This document shows positions 4,439 through 64,000 of a DNA stretch of 64,000 nucleotides, in pieces. Position numbers and translations under genes: made by a program. The stretch lies in assembly GCA_053919585.1 (NCBI GenBank), contig CM132797.1; one strand, written 5' to 3'. The notes beneath the pieces are model-generated. The model was not told the origin of the DNA, searched no databases, and saw only the letters and a program-made list of their open reading frames with translations. This DNA comes from Euprymna scolopes (taxonomy: Eukaryota). Position 1 is the first letter of the stretch; each line of letters begins with the position of its first letter.

Positions 4439-5072
4439 TTGTTACCTTTATCAACATCATGACGTTTTGAAAGCCTTAAAAACTATGATTCTGCAACACT
4501 TAAAAATTATAATCATCAATCCTACACTTTTGCTTTTAAAAATGACATTGGATTTCTTTATAGAAAGATCTGTTTCATTCTGTCTAGACAATTTCCGGTC
4601 ACAGTAATTACGAGCTTTCGCGGTTTTCCCCCACCCGCTTGAAATCACTTTTTCTTTTTAAGCCGAGGATGAAGGTTCTCATTTTGGATTTCTCTCTTCT
4701 TACTATTAGATCCCATTTGACTAGGGACAGACTTCTTTTTGGACTACTGCACTGCCCGAAAAAAAAACAACTTTCCAATCGGATTTTTTAAAACTCTCCA
4801 ATCGGATTATATGCATTGTTACGCTGGAATTATCTTGGAATACATTCTATCCAAAGAACTATTTTGCATTTTGAATCAACTCTAGAGGAGTTTCATTCAA
4901 ACTGAAATTTTATGCGCGGTTTGTTTTTATATTAGTTTTTACATATCCAATATTTTTTCATTCGTTCATTTTTTTTTGGGCAATTTATAACTACAATAAA
5001 TTGCGGTTTCACTTAATGCCTTAACAAGGAAATTCTAGTATTGCTACAAATATAATTTGCTGATTTCTTTAT

Positions 5073-5131
5073 GTCCTCTGATGAGAAAAATAATAAGCAT
5101 AACATTCTTTGAAACTCCGCGGAATAAGGAC
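5073..5131 (+). ncRNA. Type I hammerhead ribozyme, near-intact
   Basis: GUCCU-CUGAUGA-GAAAAAU...AUUCUUU-GAAA-CUCCGCGGAA-UA/AGGAC; 5-bp stem I, palindromic stem III, AUA triplet with a C.A mismatch. Confidence 0.7.
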
Positions 5132-45078: not shown

Positions 45079-45151
<73 letters not shown>

Positions 45152-45205
45152 AGTGGTGAAAATACTAGACTAGAGTGCTCAATGTGTAGCCAGAGCAGTA
45201 TATAA

Positions 45206-45421
45206 GAAATTTATTACTGTGAGTCCAGAATGAGTTTACATATTGTTTCAGCTAGAGGAAAATCCTCAAAAAGAAGAAAAGATATCCGACTAGCATCGTC
45301 AGAATTCATAGATGGCCCATCTATGAATTCTGACGATGCTAGTCGGATATTTGCTCTTCTTTTTGAGGATTTTCCTCTAGCTGAAACAATATGTGAACTC
45401 ATTCTGGACTCACAGTAATAA

Positions 45422-45426
<5 letters not shown>
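45206..45426. ncRNA. 221-bp near-perfect palindrome made of two head-to-head hammerheads
   Basis: 110-bp arms, 1-nt centre (45316), 4 mismatches; each arm reads AUGAAUU-CUGACGA-UGCUAG...CUAGCU-GAAA-CAAUAUG-U(A/G)/AACUCAU. Confidence 0.8.
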
Positions 45427-49205: not shown

Positions 49206-49265
<60 letters not shown>

Positions 49266-49269
49266 TAAT

Positions 49270-49322
49270 TAAGCTTCACAGAATATTCCTCGTTTCATTT
49301 TCGTGAGAATTCGTCAGGCTTA
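49270..49322 (-). ncRNA. Hammerhead copy with a mutated cleavage triplet
   Basis: UAAGC-CUGACGA-AUUC..AAAU-GAAA-...GUG-AA/GCUUA; GUA changed to GAA relative to 1241-1303. Confidence 0.7.
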
Positions 49323-49425
49323 CGTTATTTTCAATAATTTACTACCTAGCTCTACCAATGTATTGAGCACTGTTGAAGTAAATACTGAAAATTTACGCAT
49401 GAAATTATATCTTCATATATTAATT

Positions 49426-61812: not shown

Positions 61813-63246
61813 CTAGCATGGGTACCCGGCGTTGACTGCGTTGGCATGAAGTTCTGCTTTGAACACACCTGCTATACAAATCATTTTCATCAGGGACAAC
61901 GTGGATACCCCCACAACAATTCCAAAAATAAAAGAACGGATAAAAACATCGCCCCCAAAAAGAAGTATGCGATACCATTTCCACCAGATATCTCGGCAGA
62001 AGGGATACAAAGAGAAGAAAATATTCTCCGGATATTGAGCACTGGAAAGACCCCACCAATCGCAAAAAAAAAATAGCCAAGTAGGCAGAACCCCTAAAAA
62101 AATTAAGATCTACCAAAAATGAATTCCCAAAACAATTAAATGAAATTTTTCATCATTGTAATTCCCTCACTCTATGTAACTTATATTTTGGGGTTCATTT
62201 TGTTTATGAATTTGTTAGTTGAAAGTACAGAGTGGTATCATAAAAATTAATTAAATTTATCGTTATTTTATGTTTTAAATGTAATTTCTGCCCCCTTAAA
62301 AAAACAAACAAACAAATTGTATTTGTCATGTTTTGCCCCCCCCCTTCGATTGCCAAACTTGAACAGATGATAGAGGTGACATGTCTCGTTGAACGCTTGG
62401 TGGCCAAAATGTGGGTGCTCATTTTACGTTAAATTAATATGGAAAACTGATCCACCACTCCAAAATGTTAATTTTTTTTTCTTTTCCAAATTTATTTCGT
62501 ATTATTTATAAAGGCTATTTAAACTTTTAGGCCAAAAAAAGTAGATCCTTATTTTTTTAGGTGGGTCACAGCGTAAAAAAAATTACCGATTTCTGTATAG
62601 CCGTTAACATAGAATAATAAAAACAAACACATGAAATCTTTTCTTCAGTTTTTCGTAAGTGTTTTTTTAATATTAAAAAAAAACAATAAAAGCCAAACAT
62701 TTTTCTATCTACTCAGAATTATTTTTTCAAGCTAGAAATTCATTGAGATTACCAAATTATTTTATTAATTGATAGTTTTTATTTTTTGTTTATGCTCCGA
62801 AGGTGCAAATAACTCTAAAAAAAATATTTCTAAAAAATCGATGTTTGAATAATAATTCCAAATAAATTTAATTAAATATGTTATCAATATAATTATTGTT
62901 TCAAATTTATTAAATAACGATTTTAAATAGAACACTTATAACGAATCTCTCGCTAGAAACATTAACTAAGATACCGCTATTTAACAAAATCAGTTTTTCT
63001 TAATGTAATATGCAAATGAGATGATCTCTTTATTGTATCTAGTTTGCAAGAATCATGCTATATATAGAAATAGATGAGAGAGTAAAGTAAGGCACCTTTT
63101 GTATATATTAATCAAATTGTGAACAAACAAACAAACAGACACGAATACGAAATCTGAGGTTATTATTTTCCAGAGATTAAGTAATCAATGAAGTTTAACG
63201 AGGTTAATACAAGAGTGCTACAATTCCGAAGTAGAGCAGTGTATAC

Positions 63247-63554
63247 TCTTTATGTGTTTTTACATAAGCAAAAATATGTTGCTATAATCATGAGCATATT
63301 TTGGTTAGCTAGCTACTAGTAACTAGAGACTTCTTCGGTCGATACAGCTTATACGAAAGCAAAGTTAACAATGAAAAGAAGACCTGATGTTTTCATTGCA
63401 ACCGTTGCTTTCGTATAGGGTGAATGCTTATTCGCTGGTGCTGAAGAATTTATACGCTCATTAGCCGGAGAGATCTCTAGTTACTAGTTGTTAGCTGGCC
63501 GAAACATGCTCATGACTGTGTAGCAACATATTACAGCTTATGTAAAAAATAAAG

Positions 63555-63555
<1 letters not shown>
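63247..63555. repeat. Imperfect palindrome of about 310 bp with a decayed hammerhead-like right arm
   Basis: TTTTTACATAAGC..AATATGTTGCTA..TCATGAGCAT..CTAGTAACTAGAGA and its complement; GGCC-GAAA-CAUG...UGUG-UA at 63497-63522. Confidence 0.7.
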
Positions 63556-63592
<37 letters not shown>

Positions 63593-63685
63593 GGCAGTAA
63601 AGTTTAGTTTCCTAGAAGTACATTCAATGAAACATATTGTGTCTACCAAAAAGTGCTCAATGAGTAAACAAAGCAGGTATATTAA

Positions 63686-63892
63686 ATTTATTTATACAAA
63701 CATTGATGCCTACATATGTGCATACATGATTCTGTAATCACACGTTATTGAGGAGATTACGTTTTCAGGCCAAGAATTAGTAACTAGCAGTTTTCGAGGG
63801 TAATTCTTGGCCTGAAGACTTAATCTCCCCAATAACGTGTGATTACAGAAACATGTATGCACATATGTAGCCATCAATGTTTGTATAAATAA

Positions 63893-63894
<2 letters not shown>
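63686..63894. ncRNA. 209-bp palindrome; right arm carries an intact-core type I hammerhead (63808-63873, +)
   Basis: UGGC-CUGAAGA-CUUAAUC...GAUUACA-GAAA-CAUGU(augcac)AUAUG-UA/GCCA; the left-arm copy has CUGAAAA and GAAU. Confidence 0.82.
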
Positions 63895-63933
<39 letters not shown>

Positions 63934-63954
63934 AAATAATTATTCATTTATACT

Positions 63955-63995
63955 TACAGACACTAGTGTTTCATGCTTACTACATTATCAGTGTA
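63955..63995 (-). ncRNA. Minimal hammerhead (family of 18460), G8 changed to A
   Basis: UACA-CUGAUAA-UGUAGUAAGCAU-GAAA-CACUAGUG-UC/UGUA. Confidence 0.65.
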
Positions 63996-64000
63996 TGGGT

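What the first reader, a model, noticed from the sequence alone, without database searches (positions are those of the whole stretch)
63590..63894. Third cassette: palindrome with one intact-core and one core-mutated hammerhead
Leader AGTGCTCAA...AAGCAG, 94-bp arms, 21-nt loop, then (TA)n. The plus-strand arm has a full core and GUA, although the first stem II pairs are mismatched. The antisense arm has substitutions in both CUGAAGA and GAAA. Three ribozyme-type elements are chained through TA tracts within 63210-64000, suggesting repeated targeting of the same microsatellite.
Basis: partly seen in the sequence, partly recalled or inferred. Interest (0 to 1): 0.8.

Follow-up and report, generated by a model that had tools for sequence, protein, structure and literature searches.

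The report
Dead Penelope-like retroelement end, inverted pair
This is a decayed, mirror-image double insertion of the last ~200 bases (hammerhead ribozyme motif included) of a Penelope-like jumping gene into a (TA)n microsatellite of a 5.9-Gb genome that scan notes call a mollusc: a known kind of insertion scar, not a working ribozyme cassette.

Summary
63590-63894 is an 88-nt unique stretch, then a palindrome (102-nt arms, 92% complementary, 21-nt centre), with (TA)n on both sides. The right arm has CUGAAGA, GAAA and GUA. The left arm has G8>A and A15.1>U.

The motif is not chance. It is homologous to a hammerhead found 7,628 times in this genome (0 in the reversed control), with helices I and II covarying between subfamilies.

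The "leader" is not a leader. Read on the minus strand, leader plus left arm match (91.5%) the 3' terminal ~195 nt of a 4.6-kb element that carries this hammerhead at both ends. Its 716-aa ORF is RT-like, with a GIY-YIG-like C-terminus, and it ends in (TA)n. This fits a Penelope-like element, probably of the Hydra clade.

The cassette is therefore a 5'-truncated copy with its 3' tail, joined head-to-head to a tail-less inverted copy. That structure is published for these elements.

This copy is dead. Core positions mutate no more or less than other positions across 60 arms (3.6% vs 2.9%, p=0.31). The family's helix II closes with C.A, and this copy adds a second mismatch. RNA-seq shows no ends at 63869/63870.

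The scan has reported similar inverted hammerhead elements elsewhere in this genome. It is a new member of a known kind.

The parts
63557..63589 (.). (TA)n microsatellite flank, part of the insertion target
   Evidence: Most of the 30 family copies have (TA)n on this side.
63590..63677 (-). It is the reverse complement of the 88-nt 3' terminal tail of the Penelope-like element and holds the module TGCTCT-N-ATTGAGCACT.
   Evidence: The reverse complement of window 63586-63812 aligns at 91.5% (173/189) to the 3' end of L119, up to its (TA)n. The tail is present on one side only in all 30 copies.
63678..63779 (-). Left arm. This is the 5'-truncated copy that bears the tail. Its hammerhead reads on the - strand and is broken.
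   Evidence: Inverted-repeat arm. G8>A at 63763 and A15.1>U at 63729, both private to this copy. RNA reads from other copies show the consensus letters at these two places.
63780..63800 (.). Centre of the palindrome: 7 nt of filler (63780-63786), then 14 nt that belong only to the right-hand copy
   Evidence: Homology of the right copy to the element reaches 63787. The centre differs in length between copies.
63801..63894 (+). Right arm: the inverted, tail-less partial copy. It ends at ...AAATAAAT next to (TA)n.
63812..63818 (+). Hammerhead core C3-A9 (CUGAAGA)
   Evidence: Invariant in alignment A1 by selection.
63819..63847 (+). Helix II, a two-tier hairpin. It closes with C10.1.A11.1 (family trait) and U10.2.C11.2 (private G>U at 63820).
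   Evidence: RNA reads from other copies carry G at 63820.
63848..63869 (+). G12 A13 A14, helix III (6 bp, loop AUGCAC), U16.1 and H17 = A at 63869. Predicted cut at 63869/63870.
63896..63926 (.). (TA)n microsatellite flank on the other side

Best explanation
The cassette is a dead-on-arrival retrotransposon insertion. It should be read on the minus strand.

Structure (shown):
- Left arm plus 'leader' (63779 down to 63590) is a severely 5'-truncated copy of the last ~190 nt of a Penelope-like element (PLE). That stretch holds the element's hammerhead, 26 nt after the cleavage site, and an 88-nt 3' tail.
- The right arm (63787-63894) is a second copy of the same stretch. It is inverted, lacks the tail, and is joined head-to-head through 7 nt of filler.
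- Both outer ends abut (TA)n.
- In this genome, both autonomous PLE families examined lie in (TA)n as the same kind of head-to-head pair: a 4.6-kb element with a 716-aa RT-like ORF, and an unrelated 806-aa RVT_1 + GIY-YIG element.
- The hammerhead is an inherited feature of the element's repeated ends (pseudo-LTRs).

Mechanism (inferred): the GIY-YIG nuclease nicks (TA)n. One DNA end primes reverse transcription on the TA-rich 3' end of the RNA. The opposite end primes on the internal TA-rich site UUAAUAUA, 88 nt upstream, on a second template. The two cDNAs are then joined 5' to 5'. In an active element the ribozyme would trim multimeric transcripts.

State of this copy: it does nothing. It decays neutrally, and any transcript spanning both arms would fold into a long hairpin rather than a hammerhead.
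For: - Family: at least 40 full-length copies at 87-92% identity, 1,870 first-look candidates. There are 1,414 B-type arms within 3 mismatches, against 0 in the control.
- Boundaries, one-sided tail, variable centre and (TA)n flanks all come from the 30-copy alignment.
- Parent element L119: hammerhead at 477-532 and again at 5043-5098, each followed by the same tail; ORF at 712-2862; (TA)n from 5218.
- The reverse complement of window 63586-63812 is 91.5% identical to the 3' end of L119.
- ORF: YRDDGL and FYIGST..R..GH motifs; 616 homologues of about 700-730 aa; a profile of them aligns over 332 columns to the RT region of a bona fide RVT_1 + GIY-YIG PLE of this genome, E 2e-5.
- The 806-aa PLE cluster on C12 is itself a giant head-to-head pair bounded by (TA)n.
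- Orientation rule: every close opposite-strand pair of this hammerhead has its 5' ends facing inward, 17 of 17 on C1 and 4 of 4 B-type pairs, at spacings of 71 to 7,311 nt.
- The two arms of one copy share rare variants about ten times more often than chance predicts.
- Published PLE traits match: (TA)n bias, an adjacent inverted 5'-truncated copy, a tail at one end only, and a hammerhead in the pseudo-LTR (PMC8557442).
- Hammerhead homology and covariation: 83.6% of cells paired against 25-48% when the partners are slid; 45 double-change cells against 23.3 +/- 4 in shuffles, 0 of 500 reaching it. RNAalifold finds helices II and III on its own.
- Neutral decay.
Against: - The parent ORF has no Pfam RVT_1 or GIY-YIG hit. 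The RT link rests on a profile comparison with 77% probability. The nuclease link rests on motifs and one weak BLASTP match (E 0.021).
- L119 carries the A-type helix II loop, not the B-type of this copy. No B-type autonomous copy was fetched.
- The 40 best copies all turn around within about 30 nt upstream of C3. That could instead mean a palindromic or short master copy, and the search favours look-alikes of the query.
- The priming mechanism is inferred, not shown.
- No sequence similarity to the 806-aa PLE family.
Confidence: 0.85

Rival explanations
1. The leader-plus-palindrome unit is itself the master. It would be a SINE-like, non-autonomous element that is transcribed and retrotransposed as a whole, using the Penelope-like element's 3' end to borrow its enzymes.
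For: The 40 best hits share the same overall layout and cover query positions 1-255. Their turnaround points cluster within about 30 nt. The short class (71-126 nt spacing) is over-represented among inverted pairs.
Against: The centre differs between copies in length and breakpoints. The same hammerhead forms head-to-head pairs at every spacing from 71 nt to 7.3 kb. Rare variants are shared by both arms of single copies. A 102-bp hairpin RNA (-148 kcal/mol here, -192 for the consensus) is a poor template. No tRNA-like head was found.
Confidence: 0.09
2. It is a working ribozyme cassette: the right-arm hammerhead self-cleaves at 63869/63870, and the element makes processed or circular RNA (retrozyme-like).
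For: The 13 single-stranded core and junction nucleotides are canonical, and helices I and III can form. The motif family is conserved and covaries. Family RNA is present in poly(A) RNA-seq.
Against: Helix II has two mismatched closing pairs and is lost in the constrained fold of this copy. There is only one sense hammerhead per strand and no direct repeat, so no unit can be excised. No read starts or ends pile up at 63869/63870. Copies decay neutrally. The whole-element hairpin competes with the hammerhead fold.
Confidence: 0.03
3. It is a MITE, a non-autonomous DNA transposon of the Stowaway type that targets TA, and the hammerhead motifs are chance.
For: Long inverted repeats, small size, TA-rich flanks and high copy number.
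Against: The family unit is asymmetric: an 88-nt stretch lies outside the inverted repeat on one side only. One half is collinear with the 3' end of an RT-encoding element. The motif is homologous to a canonical hammerhead and covaries. A descriptor gave 0 hits in shuffled sequence.
Confidence: 0.02

Closest known systems
Penelope-like elements, especially the Hydra clade (Craig, Yushenova, Rodriguez & Arkhipova 2021, PMC8557442)
   Same: [quoted passage not shown] Insertion into (TA)n. A hammerhead near the 3' end in the pseudo-LTR. Partial tandems plus an adjacent inverted 5'-truncated copy. A short tail at one end only. Reported from molluscs.
   Different: Clade membership was not tested by phylogeny. 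The unit here is 4.6 kb, whereas Hydra elements are described as mostly under 3 kb. The tail is 88 nt rather than 30-40 bp. The finding itself holds only the last ~200 nt, as a mini-palindrome.
Type I hammerhead ribozymes of metazoan repeats (Schistosoma Sm-alpha, newt satellite 2) and the minimal hammerheads of PLEs
   Same: Type I topology (helix I open), CUGANGA...GAAA...UH core, an internal loop in helix I, and location in a retroelement repeat (PMC6155905).
   Different: Helix II is closed by C.A here, and by G.U or A-U in the sister family, instead of G10.1-C11.1. Helix II is a long two-tier hairpin of 27-29 nt. Helix III has 6 bp, whereas PLE hammerheads are usually described as minimal and lacking helix III. 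Rfam Hammerhead_1 recognises neither this motif nor its canonical sister.
Metazoan non-LTR retrozymes (Cervera & de la Pena 2020, PMC7229834; Li, Clavereau & Pollet 2026 preprint)
   Same: Non-coding, hammerhead-bearing repeats related to PLE pseudo-LTRs. Such tandem families were reported elsewhere in this genome by the scan.
   Different: There is no tandem direct repeat here. It is an inverted pair with one sense hammerhead per strand, so no unit-length or circular RNA can be excised.
Twin priming of L1 insertions (Ostertag & Kazazian 2001; recalled, not checked here)
   Same: Both nicked target strands prime reverse transcription, which gives an inverted 5' segment.
   Different: L1 twin priming inverts a different, more 5' part of one RNA. 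Here both arms copy the same 3' region, so two templates or a dimer are needed.

Membership tests
Hammerhead ribozyme, type I | Core C3-A9 = CUGANGA | tested here: met
   Right arm 63812-63818 reads CUGAAGA. The left arm reads CUGAAAA, so it is not met there.
Hammerhead ribozyme, type I | G12 A13 A14, the A15.1-U16.1 pair, and H17 that is not G | tested here: met
   Right arm: GAAA at 63848-63851, U at 63868, A at 63869. The left arm has A15.1>U.
Hammerhead ribozyme, type I | Helix II closed by a 10.1-11.1 base pair (G-C in nearly all natural examples; part of the 15 conserved nucleotides) | tested here: not met
   C.A in the family consensus and in 12 of 28 aligned hammerheads. This copy also has U.C at 10.2-11.2.
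Hammerhead ribozyme, type I | Three helices around the core, supported by covariation | tested here: met
   Helices I and II: 7 pairs with changes on both sides; 2.1-1.1 is UA in 13 and CG in 10; 10.4-11.4 is GC in 14 and AU in 10. RNAalifold finds helices II and III. Helix III is invariant because the search pattern fixed it, so it says nothing.
Hammerhead ribozyme, type I | Match to the Rfam hammerhead covariance models | tested here: inconclusive
   No hit at gathering score, nor at E<=10 on this copy or on a consensus-identical copy. The canonical CUGAUGA sister is missed too, while a compact hammerhead at L086:36-79 scores 28.2 bits.
Hammerhead ribozyme, type I | Self-cleavage 3' of H17 | tested here: inconclusive
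   Poly(A) RNA-seq shows no pile-up of read starts or ends at 63869/63870. That library type is poorly suited to see cleavage.
Penelope-like element insertion | An autonomous relative encodes RT plus a GIY-YIG nuclease | tested here: inconclusive
   The L119 ORF has YRDD and FYIG..R..H motifs. hhalign to a PLE RT gives E 2e-5 and 77% probability. The GIY-YIG match by BLASTP has E 0.021. There is no Pfam hit.
Penelope-like element insertion | Pseudo-LTRs or partial tandems, with an adjacent inverted 5'-truncated copy | tested here: met
   Direct pairs about 4.56 kb apart, and 21 of 21 close inverted pairs with 5' ends facing inward. See also L119 and the C12 cluster.
Penelope-like element insertion | A short tail at only one end of the insertion | tested here: met
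   The 88-nt tail is on one side only in 30 of 30 copies. The 806-aa family has an optional 31-nt tail.
Penelope-like element insertion | Insertion bias for (TA)n | tested here: met
Metazoan non-LTR retrozyme | Tandem direct units, each with a sense hammerhead, so that a unit-length or circular RNA can be released | tested here: not met
   The finding is an inverted pair and has no direct repeat.
MITE (DNA transposon derivative) | A symmetric unit bounded by terminal inverted repeats and a fixed target-site duplication | tested here: not met
   The unit includes an 88-nt non-repeated stretch outside one arm. No target-site duplication can be discerned in the microsatellite.
mir-392 and other miRNA precursor families | Rfam gathering score | tested here: not met
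   46.6 bits against a cut-off of 62. These are generic long-hairpin matches.

The most novel reading that the evidence does not exclude
The hammerhead of this Hydra-like Penelope lineage may be catalytically active even though its helix II is closed by a conserved C10.1.A11.1 mismatch (G.U or A-U in the sister family). That would make it a natural variant of the supposedly fixed 15-nucleotide core. The thousands of head-to-head pairs in (TA)n, with a tail on one arm only and turnarounds clustered just 5' of the ribozyme, may then record a two-template, twin-primed integration mechanism that has never been reconstituted for these elements.
Probability: 0.3. Interest if true: 0.55.

Novelty: new member of a known kind. 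Interest (0 to 1): 0.3.

Why it matters
For this locus, little: it is a decayed fragment of a mobile element.

For the field, this genome is a very large natural sample of Penelope-like integration events. It holds 7,628 intact copies of one hammerhead, and 21 of 21 close inverted pairs are head-to-head at spacings from 71 nt to 7 kb. The mechanism behind the inverted and tandem structures and the microsatellite bias of these elements is still stated as unknown (PMC8557442).

The lineage also carries a conserved non-canonical closing pair in helix II. That is a cheap and direct target for a cleavage assay.

For annotation, 'leader plus hammerhead palindrome' cassettes in this genome should be read as inverted 3' ends of Penelope-like elements.

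Tried and rejected
- Rfam covariance models found no hammerhead hit in the window, this copy, 20 other copies (best 150 of 202 matches read) or a consensus-identical copy. The control shows the model also misses the canonical sister, so this is uninformative.
- The sub-threshold miRNA matches (mir-392, MIR6217 and others) are generic hairpin hits.
- A tRNA-like Pol III head was not found: no ARAGORN gene and no Rfam tRNA hit.
- Derivation from the abundant 806-aa RVT_1 + GIY-YIG PLE family was rejected. Only low-complexity similarity was found. Its 3' motif, CUUGAAGA..GAAAC, is a different and non-canonical hammerhead-like sequence.
- Pfam on the 716-aa ORF gave nothing. A profile search of solved structures gave nothing.
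- RNA-seq for a cleavage signature: reads of the family lie on the element in both orientations, with no start or end pile-up at the predicted site. This is no support, and no strong evidence against.
- Selection on core positions among copies: none was seen.
Small stretches were fetched with the fetch from genomes instead.

Full report
**Observation.** It has an 88-nt non-repeated stretch (63590-63677) that holds AGTGCTCAA...AAGCAG. A palindrome follows, with arms 63678-63779 and 63801-63902 that are 102 nt long, 92% complementary and 21 nt apart. (TA)n lies on both sides. On the + strand the right arm reads CUGAAGA (63812-63818), then 29 nt, then GAAA (63848-63851), then a 6-bp hairpin, then GUA with H17 at 63869. 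The first two pairs of helix II are mismatched. The mirror motif on the minus strand of the left arm has G8>A (63763) and A15.1>U (63729).

**A repeat family.** The stretch is one copy of an interspersed family. A search of the window's own 5.9-Gb genome scored 40 full-length copies at 87-92% identity out of 1,870 first-look candidates. There are 1,414 arms within three mismatches of its helix II sequence, and none in the reversed control. It also shows that the 88-nt stretch lies on one side only, that the centre of the palindrome varies in length, and that most copies have (TA)n on both sides. In the consensus the two arms are exact reverse complements, so the left-arm core changes are private to this copy.

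**Is the hammerhead real?**
- Rfam finds no hammerhead here, even at E<=10 on a copy identical to the consensus. That result is uninformative, because the model (45 positions) also misses the canonical sister described next, while it does score a compact hammerhead elsewhere (L086:36-79, 28.2 bits).
- RNA-seq reads that overhang this copy revealed a sister family (746 pattern matches). It shares the sequence from G12 outward and a homologous tail. It has a canonical CUGAUGA and a different helix II, GGUGG...CCACU.
- The pattern CTGANGA-N20-40-GAAACATGTATGCACATATGTA occurs 7,628 times in the genome and 0 times in the reversed control.
- Twenty-eight representatives of five subgroups were aligned (A1). 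On the hammerhead structure, 83.6% of cells pair, against 25-48% when the partners are slid. Seven pairs change on both sides. There are 45 double-change cells, against 23.3 +/- 4 in shuffles, with 0 of 500 shuffles reaching that number.
- Pair 2.1-1.1 switches between U-A (13) and C-G (10). Pairs 10.4-11.4 and 10.5-11.5 switch between G-C and A-U.
- RNAalifold finds helices II and III on its own and leaves the core unpaired.
- These changes reflect a few lineage splits, not many independent events. Helix III is invariant because the search pattern fixed it.
- Even so, the motif is a genuine, inherited hammerhead-type structure and not a chance match.

Its one departure from the rule is the closing pair of helix II. 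This is C.A in the finding's group (12 of 28) and G.U or A-U in the sister family. It is never G-C.

**What the element is.** In the list the commonest hammerhead variant recurs about 4.56 kb apart, in direct and in inverted pairs. One such unit was fetched as L119. It has the hammerhead and the same tail at both ends, a 716-aa ORF in between, and (TA)n after the second tail.

The reverse complement of window 63586-63812 (leader plus left arm) aligns to the last ~195 nt of this unit at 91.5% identity, right up to the microsatellite. So the 'leader' is the element's 3' tail read backwards.

The evidence on the ORF is as follows.
- It has no Pfam match.
- It carries YRDDGL, a Cys-rich linker and FYIGST..R..GH.
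- It has 616 homologues of about 700-730 aa, one of them with a weak RVT_1 match.
- A profile of 26 of them aligns over 332 columns to the RT region of a bona fide RVT_1 + GIY-YIG Penelope-like ORF of this genome, with E 2e-5 and 77% probability.

A divergent RT, a C-terminal nuclease missed by standard profiles, (TA)n targeting, a hammerhead and a mollusc host all fit the published Hydra clade of Penelope-like elements (PMC8557442). I did not test clade membership by phylogeny.

**Why a palindrome.**
- Published Penelope-like insertions often carry an inverted 5'-truncated copy next to the main copy, and a short tail at one end only.
- Both traits are seen here. Every close opposite-strand pair of this hammerhead has its 5' ends facing inward: 17 of 17 on the first 85 Mb of contig C1, plus 4 of 4 B-type pairs, at spacings from 71 nt to 7.3 kb.
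- An unrelated 806-aa Penelope-like family forms the same giant head-to-head pair, bounded by (TA)n. It has an optional 31-nt tail.
- In single copies the two arms share rare variants about ten times more often than chance predicts: 14 observed against about 1 expected.
- In the window copy the tail-bearing copy stops 11 nt upstream of its C3 and the other copy stops 25 nt upstream, with 7 nt of filler between them.

I infer that pairs form at each insertion. One nicked (TA)n strand primes on the TA-rich RNA 3' end. The other primes on the internal UUAAUAUA site 88 nt upstream, on a second template. This step is inference. It remains unexplained why turnarounds cluster 10-30 nt upstream of the ribozyme.

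**State of this copy.** Across 60 arms, core positions differ from the consensus at 3.6% and other non-CpG positions at 2.9% (p=0.31). Forty of 60 cores are intact, against 68% expected under neutrality. The consensus arm can adopt the three-way junction (-19.0 kcal/mol, against an unconstrained -26.8). The window's right arm, with its private G10.2>U, does not recover helix II even when the core is forced open. The whole element folds into a hairpin of -148 kcal/mol. Poly(A) RNA-seq reads of the family lie on it in both orientations, but no starts or ends pile up at 63869/63870.

**Comparison and novelty.** The element works like, and most probably is, a fragment of a Penelope-like element. 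It is not a retrozyme in the strict sense (no tandem units), not a MITE (asymmetric unit) and not a miRNA gene (below threshold). Earlier notes of this scan reached a similar reading for other inverted hammerhead elements of this genome. New here are four things: the parent element, the identity of the 'leader', the orientation rule, and the covariation test. The verdict is a new member of a known kind, of low interest for the locus itself. The C.A hammerhead variant and the natural record of integration events give it moderate value for the field.

Noticed in passing
window 63205-63555: The neighbouring 'second cassette' is a different high-copy family (4,533 first-look candidates). Most copies match only its first ~173 nt and, in reverse, positions 265-351. 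It carries the same AGAGTGCT...AGAGCAG module next to its arm and ends in (TA)n.
   Followed up: partly
window 45150-45426: A third family with the same layout: module, then a palindrome, then (TA)n. Its motif reads CUGACGA...GAAAC...GUG, so position 17 would be G.
   Followed up: partly
window 49262-49400 (- strand), near window 1354 (- strand) and the 3' part of L077: Compact CUGACGA...GAAAC hammerhead-like elements that end in (TA)n. The same AGTGCTCAAT-N-TAGAGC module lies upstream on the same strand. The Rfam Hammerhead_1 match (28.2 bits) at L086:36-79 (-) may belong to this kind; its sequence was not read.
   Followed up: partly
L071+L072 (G000:C12:14492000-14509500) and L062-L070: A very abundant Penelope-like family (15,396 first-look GIY-YIG candidates) with 806-aa RVT_1 + GIY-YIG ORFs. 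Its 3' motif CUUGAAGAAGCCCG..CGGGCGAAACGUUGAGUA has an extra U in place of canonical CUGANGA. A 31-nt tail is optional.
   Followed up: partly
L119 568-591 and 662-683: The module TGCTCT-N-ATTGAGCACT occurs in the 3' tail and again, diverged, at the start of the 5' UTR of the next tandem unit. It is shared by otherwise unrelated hammerhead families, which suggests a recognition or promoter element.
   Followed up: no
L061 (G000:C553:29970-33197): The best GIY-YIG match in the assembly is a bacterial UvrC-like ORF on a small contig with no repeats of the host. It may be a contaminant or symbiont contig.
   Followed up: no
L004 2151-2269 and 2929-3043; L010 669-780: 5S rRNA matches above the gathering score, close to copies of the family. 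These could be a 5S gene array or 5S-derived repeats.
   Followed up: no
window 63930-64000 (continues in L001), window 18472, L022 5' flank: Another repeat, beginning ...ACAGACACTAGTGTTTCAT, directly follows the (TA)n tract. No hammerhead core was seen in the part read.
   Followed up: no
window 63718/63808: RNA reads from two runs (8 and 16 reads) join 63718 to 63808, skipping 89 nt. This is most simply another genomic copy with a shorter palindrome centre.
   Followed up: no
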